In this document: positions 1,443 to 38,089 of the stretch, in pieces
Layout: every line of letters starts with the position of its first letter
Numbering within the stretch: position 1 is the stretch's first letter
Assembly: GCA_965285935.1 (NCBI GenBank)
Contig: OZ260667.1
Span: forward strand, 33,666,001-33,730,000
Length of the DNA stretch: 64,000 nt
Direction of reading: 5' to 3'
From: Ophelia neglecta
Lineage: Eukaryota
Notes under the pieces: generated by a model
Databases searched by the model: none
Seen by the model: the letters and a program-made list of their open reading frames with translations, nothing else
What the model was told of the DNA's origin: nothing
Position numbers and translations under genes: made by a program

Positions 1443-1868
1443 ATGAAAATGCTTGCTAATAGGTTCACCCAATCTTTTGTGGAGCACCACCAAAGACCTG
1501 ATAAACAGCAGACGGGTAACGGTAGTGTAGGCTCGCACGGCGGGCTGGACAAGCCCCCTCCGCTGCCCACCAAGGGAATGCCACCCCCGAACTTTTACCA
1601 CCACAAAGGTCCCGCTCCCCCGCCTCCGAGACCGGGCTTCTTCCGTAGCCCCTCCAGCGACTCGGGCTGCTCAGACGTGTTCTTTAACCGCGCCGACACC
1701 AGCACCAACACGACCAAGACTCCGTCTTATACATTCTCTGCTTTTTCTTCCTCCTCACAGGAGATGGTCGGTGTAGAAACCTTCATTGACTTTGTAAAGA
1801 AAAGGGACATTGGCAGAATCAAGTTCGCTATACGAGAAACAAACTTCGATATTGACTCCCAGGATGAA
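1443..1868 (+). CDS. Roco gene coding exon 1: Pro/Ser-rich N-terminus plus first (partial) ankyrin repeat
   Basis: ATG at 1443 lies within ORF 1416..1988. Sequence is GC-rich and coding-like, ending FIDFVKKRDIGRIKFAIRETNFDIDSQDE, then donor GAA|gtaagt, after which it becomes AT-rich. The true start could be 1449 or in an upstream exon. Confidence 0.8.
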
Positions 1869-4800
1869 GTAAGTATAACATTCATTTATACTTCATTATA
1901 CTATTACGCAGCTTGTAATATGTTTTATTTTCAGATTCCTGACTTATTGGTTGATTTTATATTACAAATTTCTGCCAGTTTCTACTGAATCGGATCGATA
2001 TAATTGATAAAATATCCACCAAATCTCTGGCTGGACAGCCACAAACCCTTTGGAGGCTGACGTCGGATTGAGTCATGCGCTGTAGTTTTGTGATTCATAC
2101 CAGTTACCCTAAATGAGTGGGTGCTGTCAAAAATATCTCGGCCACCGCTCAATCACATATTTACTAGACGTGTGTCGTTAGTTTTGCGTGTCATAAGGTT
2201 ATTTGTAGCCCTAGCATATAGATAAGAGACTTAGTCCTTTGAACATTCTTTTCGATCAGCTTTCTTTATTCCACTGTCTCTTTATAAGATGCAAAAGGTA
2301 CACGTATATAGTCGAGCGAACGAAAAATATGCTTTACCCTGAGAAATGATGGCTTGTATTGATATAGAGGTTAGCAGGCTGATAAACGGGACTTGATGTA
2401 CTACAAGCACCGTGGACCAAGGGCCAATGAAATATGGATGTTAAATAGGCACCCTCAACGTACATTGTTTCATCTGTCACAAGACTATGAATACGTAATG
2501 CGCCAAGACCAAGCCCTGAATTATGCACCACGTTGAATACTATATAGTTTGCCCTCAGCTCTTATCGTTTGAGCAGCTGTACCATTGTCAATACGGCGAC
2601 TTCCAGCTCACATACAGACAGCTGTGGAACAGGATTATACAGGTTGAGGTATACTTCAGCCCACTGATACATGGTTACGGACCGACAGCCAGGTGCGAGC
2701 TTCCTGTCGTGCATATTATCGAGTTGGTCTATACAGAGCCTATATATTTATCGATCGAAATGTCAATACCTCACGCGCTTTCATGGGTGGCTCACGCGCT
2801 AAAGGCCTATAGATACAGGCGTGCTTAATGTACGTGGCTCGGCTTTGATCCACTTTGATCAGTCTATAACAAACGACTCTTGTTTTATATGTGACTAAGA
2901 TTCATGGTCTGATGTATACAATGTCTGAAATTGGATGCTATCAGTATAGTTGAAGGGTGGCCCGTGATAAGTGTGAGTGAGTAGGGAAGGGTTTGTTTCT
3001 GATTACGGGTGGCGTTCCGTTTGTTTGGGTTTGGTAGATAAAGCAGCCGTGTTGAGTCAGCGAGAACACAGGTGCGATATCGGAGGTGATAGCTGGGGTT
3101 GCCCCACGGCGTGAACCTACAGCCGCATGGTGTAGCATAAAGGCCTAGTCAATCAATGCCATACAACCAGATCCTTTGAATCTTATGGCTACGTGCTCAA
3201 TGCTCGCTCTTAAACGCGCTCTGGGTGACCCCTGGGTCATGTGACTACAATACCGTCGGCAAGGCACGTATAGTATGAATTGTATACATGTAGCATGCCG
3301 ACTACCGGACAAGATGGCCGCAGGCACACATGCCCCCAATTAAGCTAATATTGTAGCTGTGCGTCTTGTCTTCAGTGTTATAAATTACTGTTAACTTTCT
3401 CTCCGCGATTGTATGTCCTTCTTCTGTGAATGTAGACGCAACGCCTTTACCAATTCATCCCCTTGCTCTTATTGCTAATTTCACCACAGCTAGGTGCCGA
3501 ATCATGCAGAACCAATCATCGCAGGGCTTACAAACAGGAACCAATATTCGCAATGCTCACACACTAAATAGGTCAGGTCGCCTAAAGTCAGGGATAGGCC
3601 AGTATAAGTTTTAGCTACGTACGATTTAGAAAGCCACTCAACTCATTGGATGGTGGGTAGTAGCTAGTTTCCCAAAAACAGCTCGATGAGGCTGTTTGTA
3701 TTCAGCGTGCCTTCTGATGCAGCTTGTTCATTGACCTCCCCCTAGTCCACTTAGGAGGCTTGATCGTCTGGCCCTTAATCAGATTCGCAGCAGAAATACG
3801 ACAATTTTTTTCGGGCAACTTTAATAGGGGGCAATTTAGCCAGTGTTTTCGTGGATAACAAACCAAAGCCGGATGCTTACCTGGTTTGGCCGCCAAATTT
3901 CCATAGCTGCCAAGTTGACGTATAACCTTGATTGGGCTTTTTTTTATCTCCGATTGAAAAGAGTGTCTACGAACCCGGCTCCATGGTAGGCCTATTCTAT
4001 AAAAAGAACCCCATACAAGAGATATATTACAAGGCCGAAAAGGATAAGCTCTGTTTTTCTCAGATATAACGATCTGTGGCCTTGCACTGGGTTTACCCTG
4101 AACAAAGAAAGCATTTGTTCAGCTAAGCATATAGTGGGAGATAGCATTTAATCTGTATAGTGTTGACTATGGATTTTCTGGCGTTTACTGGTGCTGACAG
4201 AGTAAAAGTACCCTAATTGTGTAGTATTCTCTGTCACGAGATAGCCAAGTGTGCCAATTCAATCCTGCTTTTAAGGCCCTCTATCATGCATTAAGCTAGC
4301 CTTCAGCCCCTCCCTGTTCGGGGAGATGGGCCAAAAAACTGGTGATATCATTAAGGCTGACGTTCCTCTGTGTGCGTTTAGAGCTACAGCTGCCTCCGAA
4401 GGAAATCAATGTGCAGACACCATTCCCCCCTCCTCTCTTTATTACATGTGACAGAGCCAGCGACATCTCCCCCTTTTTTCAGGGACTTGCCAAAGAAGAA
4501 CCCCGCCCTTGGGCTACCGCTGCCGGGCGAGGATTCCCTAGGGGGCAACTTGTTAGGATTAGACTGGTTCTCTGCGCAGTCGTTGGACACAATGTCTTAA
4601 ATTACTAAGATATACCACTGACGCGCCATTTCTATAATGGTCGTCTGCCCATATGATATGTTGGAGGCACACTGAGAAATCCCACCGATAATACGCAAGG
4701 CACAGCAGGAATGACAGAACTCGTGGCTGCCGGCGTCTGAGCAAATTGAAAAGCAGAGAACTAGGAGGTGGTGGACTGTCTGAAACATCCATTTCTTCAT

Positions 4801-6878
4801 TGTACACCCTTTCGGTCATTATTCGGAGAAAACAATAAAAACGGAAGTAAAAATTGTTCAATCAGAGCGCTCTTTCTAAGAGAGCGGCCTACCATATACG
4901 AGATTGGAGGAACACTCTGTTACCCTGAAAGAGACTCGGCCAGCGCAGTTTATCTCTTTGCCTGCGTGCTTTCAAATGTATACCGTTCCTCATAGAGAGC
5001 CTGATCGAACCTTGCCAGAAAAGGTGATAGGCAATGTACAGAGGCATGAAGTTTTGTGGCTAGGAGCGTTTAGAGTTAAAGGGCATTTGGGGATTTTTTG
5101 TGGGATTTTTTGTGGGTGAAAAGCATCAACCTCATCTGAAACGTGCAAAAACATTTTCATTGAGCATAGAGTTTAATTAAACTCACGCTTTCATGAACAA
5201 GGGGACACAGCTTTGTAGGACAACCTACAATACAACTGGCTTTGTTTTCTTGACAAAATAGCCATTTCTATAGTTATTTCATAAACGCTATTGTCGAATC
5301 TGATGGCAGGTGACAGGGTAAACCCACCCAGGCGTAAACACGTGTATTGTTATTTTATCAGTTTTATAGTTCATGATCAGAGCTTGGCTTCCTTTACTGG
5401 CTTTCAGTATTATTATCATTCTGTCGACATATCATACAGTTATCGACTGATGGGATGTTGATATTAAATTTCACAGCGCCCACCTGAAGCCATTATGTTC
5501 TTCAGCACGTACCACCTCTATTCTTGATCACAGAACAGTCTACCTGAGTGAATATCTTGGGAGCAAACAATGTTTTTTTTCAAAATGGTCCACATTCTTC
5601 GTTTATGGATAATCTTGTTCTTTGGAGCAGGAAGGATGTAACACATTGCCACGCATGCGTGTCTAACATGCCTTCGATTGCCAATAGTTAAAACAAACGC
5701 TTATATCTTTAATCTTAATATCGACCTATAGGGTTTCTGATATGTATGTCATTGTTTACCGCTAGCTGTTTTGGAATTTGAAGAAATATATGATGGTTAA
5801 ATACAAAATGAAATTAGAGCTTTAGACAAATGGACCAGTGGTTGTGTAAACCTTCTAGGCCCTAAATTCACATACAGGCTAACAAATATTGAATCTAAAT
5901 GGACTCATAAACAAACATTGTATATAGGTGGTGCTTAGGCCATCGGAATTATTATTTGTGGTTAATAATCTTACGGGAAACTATATACCCGTCGCAGTGT
6001 GGCATTCATGTTGTTAATGTCACATTAGCAGACTAGAGTATGGCGAGAGCAGATCTCAACGCCATCTGACCATGAGCTGTGTGCACGTGCGCCGTGCGCC
6101 GTGGAAAATACCGTTCAATATTCTCGTCGGCAAATATTGCAAACAAATATTGAATTTCCCCGAATTCCAACGGACCGCCAAGCGCATTGGAATTAGCCCG
6201 AGAAGCCATTGTGGGCATTAGCGAGGCCGTGAACACCGTCTGCTCTCCCCTGTGAGTGAATGCTTTGTCGCCTTCCTGTGTACAATTGATGTTATTTCGG
6301 CTAATTTGTATAATTGTATGGAGACAGACAATTGGGCTCGTATGATGGTTGAGACTGGTTGACTGATCAAACGACATCCTTCCCAACCTGATTAATGCGG
6401 ATTTAGCGGCGCAATTCTGATGAGTGCCATATCTAACAGAACTGTCCCTCTTTCACATTGAATAGGTAAACAAGATCGACTGTAAATTACCGACGCGAGC
6501 ATTATTTTAACACGCACTATTGGAAGAAAAAATGCAAGCTATTGCGTGGGCGTTGGTAGCTGGAAGGGCAGATGCTCAAGGGAACTGGGCTAATATATTA
6601 AGGCGTCTATGTTTTGTGGAAACATTAATATTTAAAATAAGCAGGGACCCGTGGACTCACGGAAAGTACATAGGAGAGGACGATATTTAGTTTTTTTTAC
6701 TCCCCCCCCCCTTTATACACACTGATGATGCCTCTCACATGTAGGCAAACACTGTTGACCTTGACTCTGATGAGTACACAGTGTGACAATGTCAGGAAAT
6801 GTCTTCAGTGGACATGAATGGAGCAGTGTCAAGAGATGTCTTTGAGCTGCCATCCCTCCTTATCCCACCCCACATGAG

Positions 6879-7202
6879 AACATTTAAACTGTGCCCTGGT
6901 CATGCCAATTGACGATGACTTCAGTTATATAAACATTAAAACTGTGCCCTGGTCATGCCAATTGACGATGACTTCAGTTATATAAACATTTAAACTGTGC
7001 CCTGGTCATGCCAATTGACGATAACTTCAGTTATATAAACATTTAAACTGTGCCCTGGTCATGCCAATTAACGATGACTTCAGTTATATAAACATTTAAA
7101 CTGTGCCCTGGTCATGCCAATTGACGATAACTTCAGTTATATAAACATTTAAACTGTGCCCTGGTCATGCCAATACACGGTGACGTCATTTATATGAACA
7201 TT
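6879..7202. repeat. 53-bp tandem minisatellite, ~6 copies, in intron 1
   Basis: GTGCCCTGGTCATGCCAATTGACGATGACTTCAGTTATATAAACATTTAAACT recurs at 6891, 6944, 6997, 7050, 7103 and 7156 (last copy degenerate). Confidence 0.97.
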
Positions 7203-10200
7203 CATTGCTTTATTTGAACAGATAGATCTTAGAATTGTATTGTAGGCAAAAAAGGAACACTGTGCTTCCGGTCATCTATCCATTGTTGTTCATCTGAGTC
7301 TTCAAGGTTTAATTATTAATTGTTTATTGTCAATAAGGTCCATCAGTTAATCTTGAATTCTTGGTTGGCACCCAAGCGTCCCACATTTTCGGTGAACTTA
7401 AAAGTTACCTTCAAGGTCAGTGCAAAATTTTAACTGATGTTTCTGGTATTGACCGAGATGTATCTGATGTTCGTTTCTAAACGTTTTCTTTTCAGTCCCT
7501 TGTCTCACATTTGGAGAATTATCGATCTAATAGGTCCTTTTCGTCTCGTTTGCATCTTAATGCCATCGTAGTCATGAACAGCTAAGTTATTCTCAGATCT
7601 GAGTCTGATAATCTTCAAGAACCAGTTTGTCCATGGACGCTGTGAGAGTTTCTCCCCGTTTTAGCCACACACCCCACGTCTTCTGTTCTCAAGGATGGCT
7701 GATTCCTCTCGGTTTACGAGGACTTTGGTAGACTGATCACACCCTACCGGGAGCTGTTTCCACCATTTTCGATATCCCTGCGTCGTGCTATGCGAGGTAA
7801 ATGTGGTGCGACATGCCCAGAGTTCCGGTACGGCTCCCTGTTTGCCGTGTTGACCAGAGCTACACCGGTGAACCTTTCAACCACTAGCGGAAGTGACCAT
7901 TTTCTAGATCATGTAGCTAATCCCATTCACGCCTCTGTAGTGCCTTTAGTATTGCTCTTGCCATTTACCAAATATGGCTTTCAAGGAAGGTCGCTACTAG
8001 TTGGTCATTATGCTGGTAGCATTGCCTCATTATTTGTGTTTGCTTAAATTGGCAAAGCGTAGTTTTCTTTTTACGCTTGGAGCAGCTTAATTTGTCTTAG
8101 ACCTATAGACGTGGAAAATGTACGCCTACTGCTGGAAACTCCTGCTTAAAATATGTTATTAGTCGTCTGTTGGTAGAGTGTCACGTATGGCGTTTTGTAG
8201 GAATAGAGGCTTTTCTTCGGTGGTGAATACATCTCTGATTGAGGCTGCTATAAAATTCACCTGCGCTAGTCACCCCGCCTAATACACACCTGGTGAACAC
8301 TGATAAGACCTTTAGGCTTGCTGGCCGCCCTTCAGCCGCCGCCTGAACCCCGCTTACTCGCCCGATTCCAATCTAATACAGGTGGATCACGACGCTAATT
8401 CTCTTGAGTGGCGCGGCTCTCATGAGTAGCTGCAGGCAACAACCAGCTTTCTCGTGTCTTGGGGTGAGATTTCCTCAACGTATGAGCTGTGGAAGGCTTC
8501 AAAAGACTGTCTTTAGACTCAAATTGCGCTGGGTCCTTATGTGATGTGCAGGCAAAGCACTACAGCACTCCTTCGAAGATGAGTTTGCCGTTAGTAAACC
8601 TCTCTGACCAAAATCTAAAAACAAACATTTTATATTTAGAATTGAAGTTCCATATGAACCCAAATTAAGGATATTATCTGAAACTATTGAACGAAGTTTC
8701 TTTTGATCAATCTATGCGTTTTTTTAACCCCATCTGTCAAGGCTGTAATAGTCATTGCTAGTATAAAGTGTATGACACGAATTCGGACACATTATGATGA
8801 AGTAGTTTCTGTTGTCAACGAGAGTCGTGCTTGTTTTGGAAGTCAGTGACTCATGTTCCTGTCTACAAACAATGTTTCCAAGGTCAGAAGGTTTGTTAAC
8901 GTCCTTCCGGTGTTTGTCGTGCGTTTTATAGTTTTAAATTGACTATCTAAGACATTTAGGCTAATAACAGTATAATATACTACCATACATTACGTGTGAT
9001 CTCGTGGGACAAGCCAACATTGGCCTTAATCTCTCTTATTTAGCGCCTGGAGCCTCTCTTCCGTTCGGTGACCACCAAGCATCTAACTGCAAGATCAAGA
9101 GCTCCTTTTTTTTCGGGGTCGTCTATAGAGCAACCTTCCCGCTTATCTCTCGACCACTCTGACCTCGGTCCTTTAGTGTTGTACCTAACTAGGCCTATAT
9201 TGACATGTTATTAGTTTCGTCCTAGTCTGGGCTAACAAACGGCGAGGGCACCTGTATTTGTAAGATAGACCCAGTATACAAGGGAGCCGTTTGGACAATA
9301 ATAGACAATTCCACTAATGGCTTTGCGAAACTCTGCCGCTGGGGGCAGGGGCGTTCTTTCATGCTCAAATTGGACGGTTGAAAATGAGTATGTCTGAACT
9401 AAGACTTCGCAATCGAGAAGTCTCGTTTTAGGCAAGTCTTCGATTAGTTGTTAAAGGACCAGCACTTTTCATTTGATAGAATCCCCACCCTGGTCGGTTC
9501 TATGTTTTGCAGAGAGGCCAACCAAGTAGTGACTCCGATGACCTACATTCCTATAATGATTTTCGTTACAATATGATTGTCTTAATTGGCAAGATTTTAA
9601 TGCTTCTTGTTTACCCTTATCACAAAGCGGCTTGATTTGTACTTAATCTAGGGATATTAGCACAGCCGCACCACTGAGCAGGGTAACTGCAGAAACCCTT
9701 ATATCCAGATATCCTTCCGCAATGCTTTAGTATCATCACATCACCGGATTTGCCCAGCAATGGACTTGTTTCATGGTTTTAGCGTGTTCGTAATGACACG
9801 CTCTTGCGTGTGTCTCATTAGCCATATGGTATCACGTGATATTGTTAAAAGAAGCATAAGTTCCACACTTTGCTGTTTTACAATTTCAAATGGAGAAGGT
9901 AACTGAAAACGAAGAAGACGGTTATTGATAATATGAGGTACCGATTCCATTAACAGTTTGTTTCACATGAACAAAATCTAACGCATGAGTTATCGAAGAT
10001 AGCAAGAGCAAAATAACAAGGTAAATATTTCTTCCTATTTCATGGCTCGTCATAAAGGATACGATATCTGCAGTTACCGTGCTCAGTGGGGAATTGTTTA
10101 ATGGCAATGGCAAATGCTGAGTTGGGGAACTTTGCTCTTTGTTCCACATTGTATTACCATGAGAATATGTCTGTCGTCTAGAAGAAACCATTAACATAGC

Positions 10201-20357: not shown

Positions 20358-20384
20358 TATATATATATATATATAGAGAGAGAG
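20358..20384. repeat. (TA)n(GA)n microsatellite
   Basis: Direct reading. Confidence 0.9.
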
Positions 20385-26984: not shown

Positions 26985-27325
26985 ACTGCATGGGCAGACA
27001 AAACCAACCCATTGTAAGGGAGGTTGTTATTGGGCGGACAAAACCACCCCTATGAGTCTTAACTTGGCTGACAAAGCAACCCATTTTTCACTCGACCGAC
27101 AAAACCAACCAGTTGACAATGAAGCTTTACTCGGCAGACATAACCAACCAATTGATAAGGAGATTTTGCTCGACCAAGATAATTCCGCAATTGTCCTGGT
27201 AGTTTTAACCGGCAGACGAAATCAACACATGGTTAGGAAGGTTTCACTAGGCAAACACAACCAACCCATTGATAGGAAAGTTTTACTAGGCAGACTAAAC
27301 CAACCCATTGATAAGGACAATTTCT
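26985..27325. repeat. Degenerate 39-bp tandem repeat (~6 in-register copies plus 2-3 eroded upstream copies), intron 3
   Basis: Core CT(C/A)GGCAGAC..AACCAACCCATTGATAAG recurs at 27091, 27130, 27169, 27208, 27247 and 27286 (exact 39-bp spacing). Confidence 0.85.
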
Positions 27326-28723
27326 CACTTCAGAATACTAAAAATATAGTTTGACTCCTAATATGGTATAAACCACGTTTTATCTTTTTGCCCAATGAAA
27401 GTCACGTACAATTCAGGTCTATAGTATAAATTAACTGGGTCAATGTGCACTTACTACCTCCTTCATACACGGTGACAGCTACCTTCCCAGGCCCCAACCT
27501 GTGCTTTTACCCCACTTTTAATCCCAACTGGCAAACTTTGACCGAGATGGTCATGGACTCATCTGCGTGATCACATTCTGTCTGCCATTACAATTGATCA
27601 TGGAGATGCTTTCTGTTTTAATGAGAGATTTTCAGATTTTTAAAACTAAATAGTTGATTGATTCTCGAAAGCGGCGTACTACTTTGTTGATACAGACCCA
27701 CGACGCAGCTGCAGCTCTAGACCAAGACCCTCTCTTGTTGCCTGTTTAACATTCTGTTGCCTATTGTAAGGTTTTCCGGCCGGTTGTCTGTCGGCACTGA
27801 CCTCCGCTGAGCGTGTGCCCCGGAACCTGGCGATATTCTCTAACCCCGGTCTGCTCTCAGGCCACGCCCGCTGATAGGCCAGAGCCGCGCTCAAGTGATT
27901 GTTCTTTGTCCGTCTAATGGGACTGTCAGATTGTTCAGTAATAAAACCAAATTTAGGACCCAATCAAGGTATAAGTTGCTCCAAGACGGACACATGGGCG
28001 TTGAAATTGGAATTTTTGTGACTGCGCAGACAGGAAATGATGGTTTGTTTCTAATTCGGGAACCAACAGATTGCATAAATACTTGCAAATAGCGTCATTA
28101 TTTTCTAATAAATACTCAAACGCACATATGCTGTTAAAGCGAAAAGAGGAAACAAACTTTATCTAAAATGTCTGTCTATTTTCTTCTAGATGTAGTATCT
28201 GGGTTAGTATTTTAACCTAGATGGTATGACGGGTCATTAGAATGTAGGCTCCGGATACAGTTGCTAGCTTCCTCTTTACTAAAGCCCGGGCCGTTTCAGC
28301 CAGCCCTTATTCCAGTCAGACCTTAGAGGGAAGCAACGCGGCTCCATTTTTTCTGAATGAAGTGTAATTATCTCAATTTTCTGATTATAAGAATTGAAAA
28401 TGCCCGACCTCGAGTAAAACATTTCCCTGCCGTGTGCTCGGCTATGATTGGATTGGGGCTGCCGGGGAGACTCGACTGCCGGTACAGCGCATGTTTTAGT
28501 GCGGGGCAGGGATGGCTTGCTACCGTTGGGAGCTTGATTTGGCTCCACTCATTACTCTGACATTTTTCAATTAGCCAGTCCCTAGTATAGTTGTCACCAA
28601 GAGCCACCTATGGCGATCAGCAACAGTAAATAACCACTCGGGCGCTCTCCAGATACATATATACAATTAAAATAAAGTCCAGCTGTTGCTAATGATATCT
28701 GTTCTGAATGCTTCTTTTTACAG

Positions 28724-28816
28724 ACGATAATGACAACTTCTCAGAACGGGTTTTATATGACCCATGTCTATCAATCTGATCAATCTAGTACCACAGCAAC
28801 CAAGCTGCCATTATTG
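28724..28816 (+). CDS. Possible additional or cassette phase-0 exon of the Roco gene (31 aa)
   Basis: cttctttttacag|ACG...TTG|gtaaga; 93 bp and stop-free in phase 0 (TIMTTSQNGFYMTHVYQSDQSSTTATKLPLL). No domain similarity recognised. Confidence 0.25.
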
Positions 28817-30017
28817 GTAAGAAATGGTGGACATTTTTATCCAGCTTCTTTGGCATCAATTGCAATGCTTCTTATATAAAGAAGTGGAAGCTCTTTTCGT
28901 TTATCCCCTTAGTGGCATCTAATTCACCCTTGTTTGATTTCCTCTAACTCGACTGAGAGGAACTTTGTCAGTTTTAACTGGAATGCCAAATAGTCTTGCT
29001 GCCGGATGAGCTGCAGCCAGTAATTAGACTTGAGTCTGTAAGACATAAAGCTGCTCAAATTTTTTGGCCTATTTACGCCTCTTTCTTGTGACCAGCAATT
29101 GGAAAAAAGATCCAAGATAATGACACTGTATGGCCTTCGCTTTAACAGATATAGTTATACTGTTGGTCTCATACCATGAAAAAAGAACATAAACTTGTCA
29201 AGTAATAAGACTCTAAAGATGGATGTCCAGTCCGGGCGTTGTTTCTGTCGGCTTAAAATCTCGTTAAAATGCAAATGAATTGTATGTCTCATTACATGGC
29301 AAGTTTAACAGCAATCCCCTCCCTAGGGTCGCATTGTGCTCAGCGAAAACCTTTAATTGTAGCTCATAAATCAGGATAGATTAGAGACAGTTGTAGGTCA
29401 TATAGATTGGTCTTTTCTTGTTTCCCTGGACGGGGAAATCTTAAGCCCTCGATAATCCTGTAGTTACCTTTGTCACATGGTATTCTCCCATTCTGGGTAC
29501 GCCATGATGGATGTGTTCAAGGGGCTTAGGTGCAAGGGCTGTCCTCGCCCTCACTGTCATATGCACTGCTTCCAGAAACACATTGATTAAACAATTAGAG
29601 ATCAAAGTCTGATTTTTCTAAGAGAATGCACTTATAAAGGTTCACGGGTGCAAGGTGAGGCAGTGGTGCACTAAAAGCTCATTAACTTCAAAGGTCATTA
29701 ATAAACAGCCAATGACACTCGAAAATGTAAAACATATTCAATTCATTGTGAAATTTTATTTTCCGATTAACTAGGCTGGACATTTGCCCAGTTTTCGATA
29801 TTGCACACTCGTTCATGGTCCGTGCATTTTGACAGGAAATTTGAAGATGTGTATTAATTTATTTGAATGTCGATTGCTTGGCCCAATGCACAAGGAAGCC
29901 CAGAATCCCCAATGAAAGGGAACATGTGTTATTCATTGCAAACAAATATACCTACTTAGTTTGATTGGTGTAACACGCACGCGTGGTGTGATAAAATCAT
30001 ACTGGTAAAGTTATCCT

Positions 30018-30090
30018 ATACATGTATGTATGTATTTATGTGTGTATGTATGTTTGTATATATATATATATATAAATATATATGTATATT
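30018..30090. repeat. Imperfect (TATG)n/(TA)n microsatellite
   Basis: Direct reading. Confidence 0.85.
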
Positions 30091-33000
30091 ATGCTGTCAA
30101 TTTTCATTTCAAAAGTCGTGTGCTACTGAAGCGTCGGGAAGATGCCGTATCCGCGAGTGTCAACGGGTCCTGGGAACGAATTTACACGGCGCTTAGAAAC
30201 GAGAAAGCACATATCCTCCCGATATCGACTTACGTCAGATGACAGTGTCTTTCATGGGTTATGACAAAAGTCGCCTTTAATTTATTCCGACAACACGACT
30301 GAGGAATATGGATTGGTGGGTTTTGACTTGAGCTGTGTCAATAGCTGCTGCGTGTGTATTATGCATAATTGAACAGTGTTTACATCCTGGCCGATAACAT
30401 TGCCAGTCGTAGGTTGACAGGGGGTATTTTGATAGACTAAGGCCCGGATTTGGTGCTCAATGGCTCAAAGCGACCTGTTTAAGTGCGGTGTATTGTTGGT
30501 GACAGTTGACCTGCTGGCCAGAGGTCTGCCTTGTCGGCTTGCCATTCACCTCTCCCGCTGTGAGCTACAGCCCTATAGCCAGAACTTTGATGGACAGGAC
30601 CCCCCGGCCATGCTTCAGCAAAATTGGTCGTGGGTTTTAGGCATCTGTCAGAAACAAAAAGCCAGCTCTGGCATTACTCTTGGATGAATGATCGAGGAAA
30701 TCAATGATAAAAAATGGTCAAAAATCCAGCCAGCAATGCCTGACGCAGCGCGGGACCGTTTAGGGATTAACTTACCAAAACCTTTCTGAATATCGGCGTG
30801 ATCCGAACTATGGCTGTTTTGATAGCTTACACTTTTCGGTGTAATTGAATTGAGCCCTATTGTCGGCCAGCAAACGTAATCAGACAAGTGGAAGCTGCCA
30901 AGGAAGCAGAAGGCCGCGCCCTTTTAATACCTATAATCGCCAGATGACGGCCACGCTGAAATCTCGTCCAGATCTCATTCAAGCGTGATCTCAGTATGAG
31001 CCTTCGTGGGAGACAAGCTAACAAAACCCACCGGAAATTACAGAAATGAAATGCTAAACACATCATTGAGTGCGCAGCTCTTTTGAAGGAATGCAAAAAC
31101 CGTGGCGTGTTGGAAATAAGTCAGTGTGGATGCCTGATTAAATCAGTGTATGTCAGCTTTAAAATGTCGCCTGTCAAAGCCCCGGGCAATAATTTCCATT
31201 ACACAACAAAAATTACAAAATTAGCCCTCATAGACTGCATTTGATCGTTGTAAAGATCAATGATAATTCAACAAAGTACGGTTTATTCTCTGGCGGGGCC
31301 CATCGCAGTCCTCTTGGGCGACCTTGGTTACTATTGGCAATCGATGACGAATCGAATTAAAAAAATTAATGAAGACTGTAGATTCTTTTTACATAGCTTG
31401 CCCTTCATCGCTTCTTGTTAAAAAGCCCCATGAGTCAAATAAAGATTCGATCAGTTGAATTTGTAGTATGAATACATCAATCTTCACTGATATATTGACT
31501 CTCCTTTCGAGTATATCAACTAGAGCAGTGTGGTATTGCTCGGGTTGTTTTTCGGAAGATTTTAGTATAGCCTCTGGCGAGTATTGCTTAAAATCCTTTC
31601 ACTTTTCACTGCCAACGTCATTACACGTATGCTTGCTTTCTGTTCGTTTTGTGTGCGTTTCCTTCCAAGCACACTTATTGAATGCTGCCAGGCTTCTTTT
31701 AATAAACGTGTCAATCCTTTATGATAATATTGCGGTAATGGGGCCGATGATGCATTTGTATTGGTTATTTCATTACAAACAATCAGCTCATTTAAAAAGG
31801 CACGTATCAAAAGAAAACGGAAAATTCAGCACAAAATAAAAATATATAAATTGTTTCTACTCGCCATTCTGGTCGCACATGTAATGTGAAAATAACTTCC
31901 TAACCCGACTGCATCAATTTTATCAATTGCCGTTTTCTCCTCTAAACTGGTTTTATACTCCGAAGAAAATGAAAATTATGTATAACACACTTAAAATCAA
32001 GGCACTTGTCGCTGGCGATTGTTTTCATTTCCACCTGACAAGAAACAATACTTTTCCCCTATTGCTCTTGTCAGTTTTTCTCCATGGTCTTCAATCGCGC
32101 TATCTCAAGGCTGTTGATTTGAACTAATTACTGTATTTGAGGCGATTAGCACACCTAAAGGGAGTGGTGGCCTCCTATCTCCTCTCCATAAGCCATTGAA
32201 AGGTGTGTGGCCAATACCGATGTGACCCTTTTTCCAAGTCTTGTCCTTGGCACTCTTTCCTAACAAACCCCGCCCTTCACTGATGGAGACTAACACATCC
32301 CGACATACATGATCCCACTACTTACCAACACAAAGAAAGCCTTTGTCATAAGCATTGTGGAGAAGTTGAAGACGACACCTGTTTATTAACACTTAAGTAT
32401 CAAACTAGATTACATGTTTCTATTTTATTTTCTTGGAACTCAGACATAACCAGATAATGAGCATCGTAGCTACAAGTCTATTTACTGTTGGGAGCTGGGG
32501 ATTGTTGTATGAGGGCCTGTGGCTGCTGGTTCTTCAAGATCTCGAATCTATTTAATAGACTCTTCTTAATTAAAGATTTCGCTATGTCTGCTGGGTATCC
32601 GCTCCCCCTTTTCCAAAGCTTAAAAGGAATGAAGAAAACAAGTACCCTGATTCCTCCTGGGTATGGACCCTTTGAGTGAACACTGTCCTAGTTTCTTAAG
32701 TACACTTCCTTTCAATAAAGTCTTCTTCCTGATAACATATCACCGGTATCTGGGCGTCTAGCTGTGACCAAATAAGGCACCAACCCACGTGTCATACACA
32801 GTATAGCCTAGTGCCTCTAAGCTTGTTAGAGTCCCGGGGGACGTTACCCTTTCTCGTTTAAAGCCGCCAATCTGACCTAGATTGGGCCTCTGAGGAGCGA
32901 ACACAAAAGCAGAGGAAATTTATTTGGCGATGGCAGTGTTTGGTCCTTATTGTGGGGCTGCCCGATAGCGGCGTTCCATTCTTCAGGGGCAAGTGTTGTG

Positions 33001-34540
33001 AATGCGCTGAACCCGATGGTGGCAGCCATTACCACACAGCCCTTCGTAACTCAACAATAATCTAATCGTGCTGATTACACTACTTTCGCTGCCTTTGTAT
33101 TCTGATTCGGTTCGCAGTGTTTACGAGATGGTCTTGTGACCGGGCGGAATGAAGCACCGCCTTGTCTGCTGGCCTACTCATTTTGGTTTAATGAGAACGG
33201 TTATGCAACATCGTAAGCCGCGTGCTGTATTAGACGGAACGGACGATAAGCGCTGGTAGCCTAACTAAACTTGTAAATGTCAGACATATTCTCGTGTATT
33301 TAATAGGAATAATGACATTTTCCAGATGCCAAGTCATCGCCACTGCCCCAATAAACAAGTGTTGGTCAAATGCCAACTTCTATGATTGTCGCCAATGGAC
33401 TGTCGAGGGGTACACAATATTCGACCGACAGACTATATTGACAACAGACATGTTGAGTAGATTGGCTTTGACTGAATTTGGCAGCCTGTACGCAGTCACG
33501 TTTGTCGGATTATCCTTGTCATGTACGTTGTGCCAACCATGTCAGCCACAACACAGCGTCGGCCTGATTTGCATACGTCTGGGCCTGACGTCGATCTCAC
33601 CTTACGACCTTCGTAATGAAGGTCATTTTCGTGGGACATTTTGTCTTCTAGGTCAGGCGATGCGCAGTTAAGCTGGCTTAATGCTTAGGGCAGAGTCTGT
33701 TTAAAGATGCAATGTTTGGAGCAATTCTCGGACGAATACTAATTGTTAAGCGGTAGCGGAGGTTTCTAAAAGTGGGTCGCCTGAACTGTTCGACCATCGC
33801 CATTTTGCAGCCCGGGAACCATATTTTCTAAGATGTAATCTTGCTGTCGTCCTATGAAAGACGGCATTTCTGAGCAAGAGGGCAATCTGTACAACTGGGA
33901 GTTCGCGGTAACCCTTGCCTCCAGTCAAATCGATTCTACTTGCTCGGTCCCATCCAAACTATTTGCATCCAATTCAAGAGTAAAGTCAATTTCGTCCCTC
34001 TGCGTCTTCGCCGAGTCATATCAGCCCAGAAAGCATCCCAACATAATGGCAGAGAAAAACCACTGCCCAAGTTTTGTCCCAACATATAATTAGAAATAAA
34101 CTGATCGGCGCGTCTTCAATTAAACGGGCTGTTCTGCGATTAGCCTTCCTTATCTTGGTCCCCGGTCGTCTGCCAGAAAAGAGAGTCTTTTAACCAATCT
34201 AAAACCATATTATACAGTAAATGTATTGCGAAGGAAAGCCATCGACTGCCACGTGTTCGGGTCAGTCGAGCAGTACAGAATGTATCTCAAATGTTATAGT
34301 ACCTTGGAAAAGGAAGTCTCTTATTATTACCATATTTACGTATCTGTATCTCAATACTTTTCAGCACTCAAAACTTTATTCATTTAAAGCAAGTATCACT
34401 GCTGTCTACATATAATTTGAAGCTGGAATAATAATTACTAAAGTTGATAGATATAGCAATTGGTTAACATAAACATTTTGATGTTGTTGATGCTGTTGAA
34501 TACTTTTCCACTGATAATTCTACGTTGTTTTTTTCCACAG

Positions 34541-37500
34541 ATGCTGCCTGAAGCGTGCATTATCGACGATGTTTACAACAAGCCGCCTCCCGACAGCGAC
34601 TCGACGCTCACCAAACGACGGAGCTTCGGAGACCAGTATCTGTTGTTTGTGCATCAAAACACGAGAGACTATATGGAAAATAACTTCCCGCCGGGTCGCG
34701 AGAGCATACGAGATATGATCATCCTGCAGGACGAGTGTGTGCCGCCCTTACAGGAGATGCTTCACCGGGTGGACTACGCTCAACTGAGTACTTTATACGT
34801 GGTGGACTGCAGACTGCATATGGACGATGCAAATATATTCAAGGACCTCTCTCTACGAGCGTTGGTGCTATCACACACTCATATGCGACGGATGCCGAGG
34901 AGTATCTTTGAAATCGACTCGTTGGAGATTCTAAAGGTTGATCGTAACAACCTAGAGGAGATTCCCGCCGAGTTAGGTAACCTGAGCAACCTTAAATCCT
35001 TCTCTTGTGATAGCCAGCGGCCGCGGCTTCGGACTTTGCCTCATTCCATAACCCAACTGGAACACCTACAGATACTGTCTTTTAGCAATAATCGTGTGGA
35101 GAACATTTCCTGGGTGGTGGCGTTGCCTAGCCTGAGGGTGCTGCGGTGCAGCAACAACCGCATCGCACGGCTGCCCAACCAGCTGGCCAACCTCCGCGAC
35201 CTGATGGTGCTCGACGTCAGTCACAACCGCCTAGAGTATATCCCTCCTTCTTTCGTCGATCTTGTGTGTAGACTCTTTCGCTTCGATTACTATAACCTCA
35301 CCCTCAGGCCAAAACATATCATGCACAACCGGGCTCAACTTCTCGCCTACCTAGAACTGGACGCCTTCTTGGCGCAGTCTCCAGTGCGCAGAACAGGACG
35401 TGACGTTAGCGTGGCCATCGTGGGAGAATCCAATTCGGGTAAGTCCACGCTGGTGGAAGCGCTGAAAAACGAGAAAGGAATTAGTAAGTCGGAGATGCGG
35501 CAGGAATCTACATTCGAGATTCATCAGTTCGAGATGCACGGCGCCGAGAGCAGCTGTTACATCAGCACGATAGTTCTGGCCAACGACATCCTTGACAATT
35601 TTAGTCGCAATGTACAAGTAGACATTTACCTCTTAGTGGTAGACCTGACTTCGCTCGAGCTGCAGAACGGCTCCCAGCATCTGTTCGCGCGGCACGTTAA
35701 CCGTCTACAGATGTGGCTGACGGCGCTGTACGAGTCGAACCCCGACACACCGGTGTTGATCGTCGGCACGCACGCCGAACTGGTCAAGTCCATGACGTTC
35801 AGTGACATCTGGCACATCCTCGACGGCTTTCTCGACCAGGGCCGCGCTCATCACATTAAACGCTACGCTGACTGCCGCTTAGGCAACTGTCTGCTCTGCT
35901 GTCCCAAAAACCTGGCCATCCGGCAGGTCATCGCCAAAAGCCGGTCGGGCTCGGCCGGCTTCGTCGACCTTTCCTACCCCCACGGTGAGCCCATAATGAA
36001 CGGACATGTGCCAACGGGCGAGTCGCCACCACCGGGTAAGCATCGTTTCCCACACATCGTCGGCTACTACGAGATAGACTCTAAAAAGAACCTGCCAAAA
36101 GACTCAAAAAAGTCCAACATCAGTATTGAACAGCTGAAGGGTGCTATCATGCGGCTGACGGCGTGTAGCCCGGACGACGGGATCCCACCTAACTGGCTCT
36201 CCTTCATCCGACACGTGGCCACCATTAACGTGCAGGCGCCCACCTTGCCCTGCATCCCCTACGAAGAGGTAATCTCCATCTCTCGTAGCTTTGATATCGC
36301 CCCCGCTCAGGTCCCCTACATGCTGCAGTACTTTCACCAGCGAGGCAAGGTAGTTTACTTCGGTCAGGACGAGGTGTTATCCAAGCTAGTAGTGATCAGC
36401 CCAAACTGGTTTATCCAAGTGCTGTCGAGGGCTTTTGACAGTTTTATGACAAGTAAGTGTTCGGAGGCAGAGTTGATAGAGACATTACAAGACAGGGAGT
36501 TAGACCGGCAGTTACAGAAAGCAGGGGTGGTGTCCATATCGAGTGCTCACTGGCTCCTAGCCGCACTCACGCGACTGGACATTTGCGTGCCTTTCGTAGA
36601 TACCCGTGACCAGAAGATGTTCCTCCTACCAAACCTGTTGGAGATAGGCCAGCCCTCAATGGACGTGTGGCCCGATGTACCCGAATGGGAGGAGAAGCAA
36701 ATCACCTGCGACTTCGGCATCCGTGCGCTGAAGCCTGCACTCTTCTCTGATCTCATCCTGCGGGTGAACAAAGAGGGCCGGCGGATGCTGGAGATCGTGT
36801 CCGACCCAGCCCCGGTCTTCCTTTCCCACCACATCGTGTTCTACTGCGGCGTCGACGTCGGCGGCTGCGAGGACTGCTACGCAATCCGCCGACGGATACG
36901 CCAGCAGAACAAACACTACGAAGACGACTCTCTGGAGGACGACATTCTGCACAAGGTGCACATTCAACTACACCCCCATATGGACACGCTACGCATTGCC
37001 GTGCGAGGCGTCAGCCCCTGCTGTACTATAAAGGCCGTGCTCAACTTCCTAGAACTGTACTTGGACGACATACCGGAGGAGGACTGCGACACGTCCTCCG
37101 ACCGGACCAGTGTGTCCTCTCACGCCCTGAGCGCCGTCAGCTCAGCCACTACCAACGACGGTTCAGTCAATTCTGACCGCTGTAGTCTTACCTCCGTCTC
37201 TCAGTCACACTGTACCTCGGAGGAGGACGACGAACGACAATTTTTTCTGCTGTGCCCCAAATGTGTTCTTCTCAGACATGCCAATCCAGAGCGAATATCC
37301 TATCAGATGATTTCGCCGAAGCGCAAGGCCATTTGCAGTAAATGGCATAATCTGGGCAGCTGGTCCCGTGCGGTGACCGGGGATTACCGCTACACCAATG
37401 ACTTTCTGATGTCAAGCTCGCTGGGCTACCTGCCGGAGTACGAACATCCGCGGTTGGTGCTCGTCCTGCCGCCGAGCATCTCCGTGTCCAGCAAAGACTG

Positions 37501-38089
37501 GTACATGTTCAGCCGCATGAAGTTCCTCGAGGGCTTCGAAGTTCACTTCCTCTGCGAGTACACCGGTTACTGGCACATGACAGACGATGCCGGTTTCCGG
37601 CTCAACCAGTCAGCGCATTTCACAAAGAAGGTAGGCAACATGACGCCCACCATTCTCAATCTGGCCTTGCCCATGATTCAGATCGTCAACGGGATCGTCG
37701 AACACAGTCAGAATGGTCGGCTGCTGACGCCGGTCGTAGCCGATCTCATCAAAATGTACGATTACCTACGAAATGTAGATACCATCACGGGCGACCCTTA
37801 CACCTGGCTCACCAAAAACAAAGATCGGGTGGTCACCATGCTGACTAAAGTGCTGGCCAACGCCAGCGACGGATTTCCTGATCTCTATTTTAAAGTGGGA
37901 AATGCCATAAATGCAGACATGGTCTTCCAAGCGGCTTCCCGCGCAAACCGTTATGATTTGGCCAAATTCTTACGCATAGAAGCCAGCTCGGGAAGATTCG
38001 GGCCTCTTCGGCCACTGTATGTCGGTCGGGAGGTCCGATGGCTTTGCGATGCACACTATGAGGAACTGCGAAGCATGCCGTCCAAGTAA
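34541..38089 (+). CDS. Roco gene terminal exon: LRR repeats, ROC (Ras-of-complex) P-loop domain, COR domain and C-terminal Cys/His domain (1182 aa)
   Basis: ORF 34460..38089 with acceptor ttttttccacag| at 34540. About 6-7 LxxLxLxxNxL-type LRRs (e.g. LEILKVDRNNLEEIPAELGNLSNL, LMVLDVSHNRLEYIP). P-loop VAIVGESNSGKST at 35423-35449; VLIVGTHAE; COR hallmarks IPPNW and LQYFHQRGKVVYFG..LVVISPNW; stop TAA 38087-38089. Confidence 0.95.
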   Translation: MLPEACIIDDVYNKPPPDSDSTLTKRRSFGDQYLLFVHQNTRDYMENNFPPGRESIRDMIILQDECVPPLQEMLHRVDYAQLSTLYVVDCRLHMDDANIFKDLSLRALVLSHTHMRRMPRSIFEIDSLEILKVDRNNLEEIPAELGNLSNLKSFSCDSQRPRLRTLPHSITQLEHLQILSFSNNRVENISWVVALPSLRVLRCSNNRIARLPNQLANLRDLMVLDVSHNRLEYIPPSFVDLVCRLFRFDYYNLTLRPKHIMHNRAQLLAYLELDAFLAQSPVRRTGRDVSVAIVGESNSGKSTLVEALKNEKGISKSEMRQESTFEIHQFEMHGAESSCYISTIVLANDILDNFSRNVQVDIYLLVVDLTSLELQNGSQHLFARHVNRLQMWLTALYESNPDTPVLIVGTHAELVKSMTFSDIWHILDGFLDQGRAHHIKRYADCRLGNCLLCCPKNLAIRQVIAKSRSGSAGFVDLSYPHGEPIMNGHVPTGESPPPGKHRFPHIVGYYEIDSKKNLPKDSKKSNISIEQLKGAIMRLTACSPDDGIPPNWLSFIRHVATINVQAPTLPCIPYEEVISISRSFDIAPAQVPYMLQYFHQRGKVVYFGQDEVLSKLVVISPNWFIQVLSRAFDSFMTSKCSEAELIETLQDRELDRQLQKAGVVSISSAHWLLAALTRLDICVPFVDTRDQKMFLLPNLLEIGQPSMDVWPDVPEWEEKQITCDFGIRALKPALFSDLILRVNKEGRRMLEIVSDPAPVFLSHHIVFYCGVDVGGCEDCYAIRRRIRQQNKHYEDDSLEDDILHKVHIQLHPHMDTLRIAVRGVSPCCTIKAVLNFLELYLDDIPEEDCDTSSDRTSVSSHALSAVSSATTNDGSVNSDRCSLTSVSQSHCTSEEDDERQFFLLCPKCVLLRHANPERISYQMISPKRKAICSKWHNLGSWSRAVTGDYRYTNDFLMSSSLGYLPEYEHPRLVLVLPPSISVSSKDWYMFSRMKFLEGFEVHFLCEYTGYWHMTDDAGFRLNQSAHFTKKVGNMTPTILNLALPMIQIVNGIVEHSQNGRLLTPVVADLIKMYDYLRNVDTITGDPYTWLTKNKDRVVTMLTKVLANASDGFPDLYFKVGNAINADMVFQAASRANRYDLAKFLRIEASSGRFGPLRPLYVGREVRWLCDAHYEELRSMPSK

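What the first reader, a model, noticed from the sequence alone, without database searches (positions are those of the whole stretch)
1443..38089. Kinase-less ankyrin-LRR-ROC-COR Roco protein hidden across 36 kb
Seen: the ORF track shows only the 1209-aa LRR-ROC-COR piece, but three small phase-0 exons 12-33 kb upstream add a Pro-rich N-terminus and ankyrin repeats. Established: in animals ANK+LRR+ROC+COR occurs in LRRK1/LRRK2, which have a kinase after COR; MFHAS1 is LRR-ROC-COR without ankyrins; DAPK1 has kinase-ANK-ROC-COR-death domain. This protein fits none of them. Inference: a distinct invertebrate Roco subfamily, plausibly a signalling scaffold or innate-immune sensor.
Basis: partly seen in the sequence, partly recalled or inferred. 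Interest (0 to 1): 0.75.

Follow-up and report, generated by a model that had tools for sequence, protein, structure and literature searches.

The report
Kinase-less ankyrin Roco gene of annelids
This is a real, conserved worm gene for a large signalling-type protein related to the Parkinson's-disease protein LRRK2 but lacking its kinase and carrying a crippled GTP switch, a moderately interesting new branch of a known family.

Summary
The four exons are 1443-1868, 19986-20096, 22661-22783 and 34541-38089. All are phase 0 with canonical splice sites, and they sum to 1402 codons.

No RNA data exist for this organism, so splicing was tested by comparison:
- The acceptor in front of exon 4 is conserved in 17 of 17 genomic copies.
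- The donor after exon 1 is conserved in 45 of 45 homologues.
- Exons 2-3-4 lie in the same order, strand and phase on a distant metagenome contig (L027).
- A GenBank model from the annelid Ridgeia piscesae (KAK2182355.1) makes exactly the same 2-3-4 join.
- The only paralogue in this genome also has an ankyrin exon upstream.
- The exon 1 to exon 2 link stays inferred.

The protein ends at a conserved stop, and no kinase is encoded in the window. In a ROC-COR tree the family (100/100) groups with that paralogue (100/99). It lies outside the MFHAS1 clade (97/98), which contains another locus of this genome. DAPK1 and TORNADO1 were not in the tree.

ROC keeps its P-loop but has lost the DxxG aspartate in 10 of 10 members. 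A 240-residue Cys/His-bearing tail matches no family.

Verdict: a new variant of the Roco family, shown by name only in annelids. The gene is single-copy with conserved LRRs, which argues against an immune sensor.

The parts
1443..1868 (+). Exon 1: start codon, a Pro/Ser-rich N-terminus and a conserved 36-residue block at its end. Phase-0 donor GAA|gtaagt.
   Evidence: Borders read. It is the only copy in the genome. 45 homologues were found. In 45 of 45 the residue after the last conserved one is V (a GTN donor) and similarity stops there. No Pfam family matches.
1641..1676 (+). Conserved FRSPSSDSGCSD motif in exon 1, possibly a phosphorylation site.
   Evidence: SSDSG[CY]S[DE] is present in 9 of the 17 homologues fetched, and one more has a variant. 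The other 7 are short fragments that do not reach this region. The function is an inference only.
1761..1868 (+). Conserved block (E)MVGVETF...DSQDE, ankyrin-repeat-sized and possibly an N-terminal capping repeat.
   Evidence: This is the best-kept part of exon 1, with up to 84% identity. In many species it is a separate ~36-codon exon preceded by ..Q (cag). It ends D-I-D-x-x-D-E, as exon 2 ends D-V-N-x-x-D-E. Pfam Ank hit 0 of 10 sequences, so calling it an ankyrin repeat is by eye only.
1869..19985 (+). Intron 1 (18.1 kb).
   Evidence: Inferred from the model. No further shared exon was found by tblastx against the metagenome loci, but those loci hold little upstream DNA.
19986..20096 (+). 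Exon 2: one ankyrin repeat, 37 codons, phase 0-0.
   Evidence: Borders read. Pfam Ank E 3.5e-7. 81% identical to residues 24-60 of Ridgeia P0204. A counterpart lies at L027:1232-1336 with its own ag|..|gt borders.
20097..22660 (+). Intron 2 (2.6 kb).
   Evidence: DNA contigs of runs X1-X3 cover it without joints.
22661..22783 (+). Exon 3: one ankyrin repeat, 41 codons, phase 0-0.
   Evidence: Borders read. Pfam Ank_3, Ank and Ank_2 at E 3e-4 to 6e-4. 80% identical to residues 61-101 of P0204. A counterpart lies at L027:3927-4049.
22784..34540 (+). Intron 3 (11.8 kb).
   Evidence: Apart from a simple repeat at 30018-30126, tblastx found nothing here shared with L027.
34541..38089 (+). Exon 4: 1182 codons plus stop, encoding LRR-ROC-COR and the C-terminal tail.
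   Evidence: AG stands directly before the ATG in 17 of 17 genomic copies. In 12 of 12 homologue ORFs that extend upstream, the residue before the M is Q.
34781..35350 (+). Leucine-rich repeats (exon-4 residues about 81-270).
   Evidence: Pfam LRR_14 at 63 bits, plus LRR_8 and LRR_4. This is the best-conserved region in the most distant group, at 0.52 identity.
35387..35950 (+). ROC G domain (residues about 283-470). The P-loop is at 35423-35446; the DxxG Asp is lost; G4 reads THAE.
   Evidence: Pfam MMR_HSR1 28 bits and Roc 18 bits (below the cut-off of 27). G295, G300, K301 and T410-H411-A412 are invariant in 21 rows. Motifs were compared.
36185..36640 (+). COR-A domain.
   Evidence: Pfam PF16095 at 52 bits. 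The same stretch was found by the genome scan at 57.5 bits.
36641..37375 (+). COR-B-like region. It ends in a conserved CPxC...C...H motif at 37253-37348.
   Evidence: Pfam COR-B matches the paralogue's equivalent exon at 32.8 bits, but not the window protein. C, P, C, C and H are invariant or nearly so in 25 rows. By eye, MFHAS1 and P0032 end with a similar motif.
37376..38086 (+). C-terminal tail of about 237 residues. It is specific to this clade and has conserved H..LCE....H and W.C..H motifs.
   Evidence: No Pfam or NCBIfam family matches. It is conserved in all family members and in the C7 paralogue. hhalign against bacterial Roco P0036 gave probability 0.2%.
38087..38089 (+). Conserved stop codon; no kinase follows.
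   Evidence: In every family sequence read that reaches the C-terminus, similarity runs to a conserved ...W(L/V)C..H..EL(R/K) motif. The ORF then stops within about 5 to 15 residues. tblastn with an LRRK2-like protein and a receptor kinase found no kinase anywhere in the window.

Best explanation
The window holds a four-exon, single-copy gene of an annelid. It encodes a protein of about 1400 residues, made up in this order of:
- a Pro/Ser-rich N-terminus with a conserved SSDSGCSD motif;
- two Pfam-detectable ankyrin repeats, possibly preceded by a cryptic capping repeat;
- about seven leucine-rich repeats;
- a ROC G domain;
- COR-A and COR-B;
- a 240-residue Cys/His-bearing tail found only in this clade.
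There is no kinase.

The protein belongs to a distinct Roco clade that also includes one paralogue in the same genome. That paralogue is likewise preceded by an ankyrin exon, but it still has canonical GTPase motifs.

Likely mechanism (inferred, not shown). The ROC domain keeps the phosphate-binding P-loop but lacks the switch-II DxxG aspartate, and often the G4 aspartate too. It probably still binds a nucleotide but does not cycle like a normal GTPase. The protein would then act as a COR-dimerised scaffold. Its ankyrin and LRR surfaces would bind conserved partners, and its output would go through the C-terminal tail rather than through a kinase.
For: Gene model:
- Canonical phase-0 borders at all exons.
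- AG directly before the exon-4 ATG in 17 of 17 genomic copies.
- The exon-1 donor is conserved in 45 of 45 homologues.
- Exon 2-, 3- and 4-like exons lie in the same order, strand and phase on L027, a member of the most distant group, about 40% identical to exon 4.
- The Ridgeia model KAK2182355.1 joins the same three exons, and Pfam finds Ank (36 bits), Ank_2 (32.5), LRR and COR-A on it.
- The C7 paralogue has an ankyrin exon (Pfam 36.8 bits) 1.7 kb upstream of its LRR-ROC exon.

No kinase: the stop is conserved and there are no kinase hits in the window.

Distinct clade. In the careful ROC-COR tree (31 rows, 559 columns) the family has support 100/100 and joins the paralogue at 100/99. The MFHAS1 clade, which includes own locus C2, has 97/98.

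Degenerate ROC. The Asp of DxxG is replaced in 10 of 10 family rows. G4 reads THAE in 7 of 10. The residue after the P-loop GK is A, C or R in 3 of the 13 family rows checked, the window's own included.

Single copy. LRRs conserved.
Against: - There is no transcript evidence at all: no RNA run is on record, and the runs laid are DNA.
- No full-length spliced homologue was found among cluster representatives.
- The Paralvinella gene model (KAK2144478.1) has a different N-terminus without ankyrin repeats.
- The first residue of exon 4 is a methionine in all 21 rows of alignment A2, and in two further family sequences the ORF simply starts six residues later. A shorter protein starting there cannot be excluded.
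- Pfam does not call the end of exon 1 an ankyrin repeat (0 of 10), and no locus was found that holds exon 1 and exon 2 together.
- Nucleotide binding, dimerisation and the role of the tail are untested.
Confidence: 0.7

Rival explanations
1. The gene is exon 4 alone. The ATG at 34541 would be the true start, reached through a 5'-UTR intron, and the ankyrin exons would belong to a separate upstream gene.
For: The first codon of exon 4 is ATG in all 21 rows of A2. Most homologue ORF calls start exactly there. The Paralvinella model lacks ankyrin repeats.
Against: - Exon 3 ends in a conserved phase-0 donor, and no terminal exon follows it.
- The same exon 2-3-4 order, strand and phase recur on L027 and in the Ridgeia model.
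- The paralogue has an ankyrin exon in the same place.
- A UTR intron fixed exactly at position -1 across lineages that are only about 40% identical would be unusual.
Confidence: 0.1
2. Exons 2-4 form the gene, but exon 1 is not its first exon. It would belong to another gene, or further unseen exons would lie in the 18-kb intron.
For: No contig or model links exon 1 to exon 2. The Ridgeia model lacks exon 1. Pfam sees no ankyrin repeat in exon 1.
Against: - Exon 1 lies on the same strand, is a unique copy and has a conserved phase-0 donor (45 of 45).
- Its conserved block is ankyrin-exon-sized and ends at the same repeat position as exon 2.
- GC-rich, Ala-rich exon-1 homologues (P0150, P0157, P0165) look like the GC-rich exon-4 group (P0025-P0031). 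This suggests the same taxa hold both, but it is by eye only.
Confidence: 0.15
3. It is an ordinary MFHAS1 orthologue with an extended N-terminus.
For: It has the LRR-ROC-COR core without a kinase. By eye, MFHAS1 ends with a similar CxxC...C motif.
Against: - MFHAS1 (P0072) aligns to the window protein only over the LRRs and as far as the P-loop (E 2.6e-15). It aligns over 771 residues to own locus C2:41.34 Mb (E 1.7e-40).
- The tree separates the two clades at 97/98 and 100/99.
- The window protein has an extra 240-residue tail.
Confidence: 0.03
4. It is an innate-immune LRR sensor, as has been proposed for brown-algal ROCOs.
For: The LRR plus NTPase architecture resembles that of pattern-recognition receptors. 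Reviews discuss immune roles for ROCO proteins (PMC4104024 and PMC11378527, passages read).
Against: - It is single-copy with one distant paralogue and no expansion.
- The LRRs are the best-conserved region at long range, not diversified.
- The LRRs lie in one exon, so there is no exon shuffling.
Confidence: 0.1

Closest known systems
LRRK1 / LRRK2 (animal Roco group 2)
   Same: The same N-terminal order: ankyrin repeats, LRRs, ROC, COR. The profile of the family matches LRRK2 over LRR plus ROC (E 1e-25).
   Different: No kinase and no WD40 (conserved stop). Only 2-3 ankyrin repeats. The ROC domain lacks the DxxG Asp. There is a clade-specific tail. The one LRRK2-like row in the tree does not group with the family.
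MFHAS1 / MASL1 (LRR-ROC-COR)
   Same: A kinase-less LRR-ROC-COR core, and by eye a similar Cys motif at the end of COR-B.
   Different: MFHAS1 has no ankyrin repeats and no tail. It is a separate clade in the tree (97/98), and the MFHAS1-like gene of this genome is a different locus.
DAPK1
   Same: Ankyrin repeats together with ROC-COR in one protein.
   Different: DAPK1 has an N-terminal kinase, no LRRs and a death domain (PMC6337361, passages read). None of these is found here. DAPK1 was not in my tree.
Plant TORNADO1 and prokaryotic LRR-ROC-COR Rocos (e.g. Chlorobium CtRoco)
   Same: A kinase-less LRR-ROC-COR arrangement. CtRoco chains match the family profile (E 5e-34 to 1e-33).
   Different: They have canonical G motifs and no ankyrin repeats. 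hhalign of the tail against a bacterial Roco gave no support (probability 0.2%). No TORNADO1 sequence was available to test.
Paralogue in the same genome (G000:C7:71.558-71.564 Mb)
   Same: The same clade (100/99) and the same tail, 22-24% identical (E 5.5e-20 and 1.3e-17). It shares the 'CLLC' insertion after G4 and has an ankyrin exon upstream.
   Different: It has several exons instead of one. It keeps canonical GQEGVGKT, DCGG and THAD motifs, and Pfam Roc scores 46 bits.

Membership tests
Roco proteins | A COR domain directly after the G domain | tested here: met
   Pfam COR-A scores 52.3 bits against a cut-off of 35.3, at residues 576-727 of the ORF and right after the G domain. The genome scan gave 57.5 bits. 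COR-B is detected only on the paralogue, at 32.8 bits.
Roco proteins | A ROC (Ras-like) G domain | tested here: inconclusive
   Pfam Roc scores 18.1 bits, below the cut-off of 27, while MMR_HSR1 scores 28.1 bits, above its 21.9. The domain aligns column for column with the ROC of MFHAS1, an LRRK2-like protein and bacterial Rocos, and it falls inside the Roco tree.
Roco proteins | Functional GTPase motifs (P-loop, DxxG, [NT][KH]xD) | tested here: not met
   The P-loop GxxxxGK is kept (invariant in 21 rows). The Asp of DxxG is replaced in 10 of 10 family rows. G4 reads THAE in 7 of 10.
LRRK (LRRK1/LRRK2) | A protein kinase domain after COR | tested here: not met
   The stop is conserved in all homologues. 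There is no Pkinase hit and no kinase match in the whole window by tblastn.
LRRK (LRRK1/LRRK2) | Ankyrin repeats N-terminal to the LRRs | tested here: met
   Exons 2 and 3 are Pfam Ank hits. The natural Ridgeia protein scores 36 bits on Ank and 32.5 on Ank_2. The join itself is supported by comparison only.
MFHAS1 | Orthology by ROC-COR phylogeny | tested here: not met
   The family lies outside the clade that holds the three MFHAS1-named rows and own locus C2 (97/98). BLAST points the same way.
DAPK1 | An N-terminal CaM-kinase domain and a C-terminal death domain | tested here: not met
   There is no Pkinase or Death hit on exon 1, on exon 4 or on P0204. Phylogeny was not tested, because no DAPK1 sequence was at hand.
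TORNADO1 | Sequence relationship of ROC-COR and of the C-terminal region | not tested

The most novel reading that the evidence does not exclude
Annelids, and perhaps other spiralians, carry a so-far undescribed class of animal Roco proteins. The architecture is ankyrin-LRR-ROC-COR plus a new Cys/His-rich, possibly metal-binding, C-terminal output domain in place of a kinase. One paralogue would be an active GTPase. The other, the window gene, would be a conserved pseudo-GTPase locked in one nucleotide state. The pair would be a natural experiment on what the LRRK-type ANK-LRR-ROC-COR scaffold does without kinase activity.
Probability: 0.45. Interest if true: 0.6.

Novelty: new variant of a known kind. 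Interest (0 to 1): 0.45.

Why it matters
Reviews list three architectural groups of Roco proteins and four vertebrate members, and one states that protostomes have only LRRK and DAPK1 (PMC6337361 and PMC4104024, passages read). This gene adds a conserved, kinase-less clade in a protostome phylum. It has an LRRK-like N-terminal half and its own C-terminal domain. It comes as a paralogue pair in which one copy has lost the switch-II aspartate.

That makes it a tractable system for two questions: what ROC-COR scaffolding does independently of kinase activity, and what a pseudo-GTPase ROC is for.

There is also an annotation lesson. ORF calls and one of the two published annelid gene models miss the small N-terminal exons, which lie 12-33 kb upstream.

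Tried and rejected
RNA evidence. The look-up of sequencing runs found only three runs of one sample, none on record as RNA. Laid on 19500-23300, they cover the introns without joints, so they are DNA.

I used the search for related loci on metagenome contigs instead.

Full-length spliced homologues. None was found by the big search with exon 1: 45 hits, all 43-295 aa. None was found by a word search with residues 24-120 of the natural Ridgeia protein: 15 candidates, none scored. Cluster listings gave one informative member, P0204, and no names in ten further clusters.

The ESM Atlas could not read the window sequence. On the tail of P0204 its best hit scored 0.77, a bacterial COR-A/COR-B cluster, which is a lead only.

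Tail. It matches no Pfam or NCBIfam family. My by-eye resemblance to the C-terminus of bacterial Roco P0036 was not supported by hhalign (probability 0.2%).

Exon 1 as an ankyrin repeat. Pfam gave 0 of 10.

Ankyrin exons near the paralogue. tblastn with the window's exons 1-3 found nothing. A motif scan then found one ankyrin exon, which Pfam confirmed.

PDB profile search. It was dominated by LRR proteins and is of little use for placement.

Our-findings search by words. Nothing was found.

Literature. Two searches listed no paper on an annelid or ankyrin-bearing kinase-less Roco. PMC11378527 says up to forty ROCO domain combinations occur in animals. Its figure and supplements, which I could not see, may already include this one.

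Tree. I used 13 of the family sequences I held: the window plus 12 of about 40 fetched, chosen to span the identity range. The paralogue went in as its single ROC exon only. There was one LRRK2-like row. There were no DAPK1, LRRK1, TORNADO1 or Dictyostelium rows, because none was returned by the searches.

Step left out. Every search used single exons or the natural database protein P0204.

Full report
What is in the sequence. The window has one very long ORF, 34460-38089 (1209 aa).
- Exon 1, 1443-1868: 142 codons, from the first in-frame ATG to GAA|gtaagt.
- Exon 2, 19986-20096: 37 codons, with a long T-run and ctgcag in front and gtatgt behind.
- Exon 3, 22661-22783: 41 codons, tttcag in front and gtaagt behind.
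- Exon 4, 34541-38089: 1182 codons plus stop, tttttttccacag in front.

Pfam finds the following. Exon 4 matches LRRs (LRR_14, 63 bits), a P-loop G domain (MMR_HSR1 28 bits; Roc only 18 bits against a cut-off of 27) and COR-A (52 bits). Exons 2 and 3 each hold one ankyrin repeat (E 3.5e-7, and 3e-4 to 6e-4). Exon 1 matches nothing.

Is it spliced as proposed? Direct evidence could not be had. The run search returned three runs of one sample, none on record as RNA. Laid on 19500-23300, their contigs cover exons and introns alike without a single joint. I therefore tested the model by comparison, exon by exon.

Exon 4. A word search found 322 proteins at E<=0.001 among 7966 candidates. The top 31 (P0001-P0031, 75-34% identity) are co-linear relatives. 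Most are plain ORF calls on unannotated contigs. Nearly all begin at the conserved M-L-P of exon 4. In 12 of 12 sequences whose ORF runs further upstream, the residue before that M is Q, preceded by F, L, P or V, which is what a pyrimidine tract plus CAG would translate to. At DNA level the ATG is directly preceded by AG in the window and in 16 metagenome loci, 17 of 17. L032 was left out because that contig starts inside the exon. Exon 4 is therefore an internal or acceptor-bearing exon in every lineage, including the group only about 40% identical.

Exons 2 and 3. Listing the 90%-identity clusters turned up P0204, which is GenBank KAK2182355.1, a 1307-residue hypothetical protein of the siboglinid annelid Ridgeia piscesae. 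Its sequence reads as follows:
- a short, probably intron-derived leader;
- a 37-residue stretch 81% identical to window exon 2;
- a 41-residue stretch 80% identical to exon 3;
- the M-L-P start of exon 4.
Pfam finds Ank (36 bits), Ank_2 (32.5 bits), LRR and COR-A on it. A paper that assembled Ridgeia and Paralvinella built its models with Maker2 from Augustus predictions, species transcriptomes and related proteins (PMC10414810, passages read). That this record comes from that study is my inference, and whether this junction has transcript support is unknown.

A scan of metagenome contigs with the most distant group gave 17 loci. One of them, L027, reaches 7 kb upstream of exon 4. It carries an exon-2-like exon (1232-1336, tttgcag|..|gtgagt) and an exon-3-like exon (3927-4049, tgtgcag|..|gtacga) on the same strand, in the same order and both in phase 0. 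tblastx between that contig and the window found no other shared exon.

The only paralogue in this genome lies at C7:71.56 Mb. It has an ankyrin exon of 33 codons (Pfam Ank 36.8 bits) with ag and gt borders, 1.7 kb upstream of its LRR-ROC exon. Against this, the Paralvinella model KAK2144478.1 has a different N-terminus without ankyrin repeats.

Exon 1. It has no second copy in the genome. The search of 1.84 billion representatives found 45 homologues, all short ORF fragments of 43-295 aa. The conserved parts are an SSDSG[CY]SD motif and, above all, the last 36 residues. In 45 of 45 the residue after the last conserved one is V (GTN), and similarity ends there. That marks a conserved phase-0 donor. 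In many species this 36-residue block is a small exon of its own, preceded by ..Q. It has the size of the ankyrin exons and ends at the same point of the repeat as exon 2. However, Pfam does not call it an ankyrin repeat in any of 10 sequences, and I found no contig or model that links it to exon 2. The exon 1 to exon 2 join therefore rests on strand, phase, uniqueness and this resemblance.

No kinase. In every family sequence read that reaches the C-terminus, similarity runs to a conserved ...W(L/V)C..H..EL(R/K) motif. The ORF then stops within about 5 to 15 residues. tblastn of an LRRK2-like protein and of a receptor kinase against the whole window hits only the LRR and ROC part of exon 4.

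Which Roco is it? MFHAS1 (P0072) aligns to the window protein only over the LRRs and up to the P-loop (E 2.6e-15). It aligns over 771 residues, covering LRR, ROC and COR, to a single 1144-codon ORF at C2:41.34 Mb of the same genome (E 1.7e-40). The genome holds about nine COR-A loci (12 matches).

I built a careful ROC-COR tree with IQ-TREE (31 rows, 559 columns). The rows were:
- 13 family members;
- the paralogue's ROC exon;
- the C2 locus;
- three MFHAS1-named proteins;
- five unnamed eukaryotic Rocos;
- a bryozoan Roc-caspase protein;
- one LRRK2-like protein;
- six bacterial Rocos.
The family is monophyletic (100/100) and sister to the C7 paralogue (100/99). The MFHAS1-named rows sit with the C2 locus in another clade (97/98). 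The tree has only one LRRK row and no DAPK1, TORNADO1 or Dictyostelium rows, so placement relative to those remains open.

Anatomy bearing on mechanism.
- P-loop. G295, G300 and K301 are invariant in 21 rows. The Mg-binding residue after K is A, C or R in 3 of the 13 family rows checked, the window's own included.
- DxxG. Canonical Rocos, including the C7 paralogue, read [WYF]D[FC][GAS]G here. In all 10 family rows aligned, a hydrophobic residue stands in place of the Asp. Only 2 of the 10 keep the Gly.
- G4. It reads THAE in 7 of 10 and THAD in 3 of 10.
- Insertion. The family and the paralogue share a Cys-bearing insertion after G4.
- COR-B end and tail. COR-B ends in a CPxC...C...H motif. 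A tail of about 237 residues follows, with invariant H..LCE....H and W.C..H. It matches no Pfam or NCBIfam family. My impression that a bacterial Roco has a similar tail failed the hhalign test.
- Conservation by region. The LRRs are the best-kept part in the distant group (0.52) and COR-A the least (0.32).

Interpretation. The gene is real, and it is best read as a kinase-less ankyrin-LRR-ROC-COR protein with a clade-specific tail. A P-loop without the switch-II Asp suggests nucleotide binding without normal cycling. COR suggests dimerisation. Conserved ankyrin and LRR surfaces suggest fixed partners. These steps are inferred. Single copy and conserved LRRs argue against a diversifying immune receptor.

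Comparison and novelty. Reviews describe three Roco groups and four vertebrate members, and one states that protostomes have LRRK and DAPK1 only (PMC6337361 and PMC4104024, passages read). A 2024 survey mentions up to forty domain combinations among animal ROCOs (PMC11378527, passage read; figure and supplements not seen). That survey could already include this architecture. The protein is in GenBank as 'hypothetical'. My two literature searches listed nothing on it.

I rate it a new variant of a known kind, of moderate interest. By name it is shown only in annelids. I recall, but did not check, that the metagenome contigs come from samples of gutless marine oligochaetes.

Noticed in passing
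G000:C7:71558762-71564429 (loci L016:8762-8860 and L011:410-4429): This is the paralogue of the window gene. It has an ankyrin exon, an LRR-ROC exon with canonical GQEGVGKT, DCGG and THAD motifs, COR exons and the same C-terminal tail. It may be the active-GTPase partner of a pseudo-GTPase pair.
   Followed up: partly
G000:C2:41339001-41347000 (L054, minus strand): A single 1144-codon ORF encodes an MFHAS1-like LRR-ROC-COR protein in a protostome genome (E 1.7e-40 to gecko MFHAS1 over 771 residues). A 2014 review states that only deuterostomes have MFHAS1.
   Followed up: partly
window 35423-35446 and homologues P0170, P0013, P0023: The residue after the P-loop GK, normally S or T, is A, C or R in three family members. 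This is a further sign that nucleotide chemistry is relaxed in this family.
   Followed up: partly
window 1641-1676: A conserved SSDSG[CY]SD motif lies in the otherwise variable N-terminus. From memory it resembles phospho-dependent degron or kinase-site motifs. This was not tested.
   Followed up: no
window 1740-1765: Inside exon 1 the sequence just before the conserved block reads like a splice acceptor (a pyrimidine run plus cag). In many other species an intron sits exactly there, so this looks like intron loss, or an alternative acceptor, in this lineage.
   Followed up: partly
window 26908-27354: A 148-aa ORF inside intron 3 is made of a repeated ~11-residue unit (..GRHNQPIDKE..). It is probably a tandem DNA repeat rather than a gene.
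   Followed up: no
window 30018-30126: A simple repeat in intron 3 produced many spurious tblastx matches to the start of contig L027.
   Followed up: no
window 52308-52592 and 56085-57485: Two further repeat-built ORFs lie downstream of the gene, one with a GAEVRRGREQRSGAGG unit and one with a 17-aa hydrophobic unit. The second is the subject of another note of the scan (s1-748456).
   Followed up: no
window 19500-23300: The DNA contigs of the three runs split into paired bubbles at several intron sites (for example 19584-19693, 20848-20959 and 21282-21395). This is heterozygosity in the sequenced individual. None of the listed differences falls in exon 2 or exon 3.
   Followed up: no
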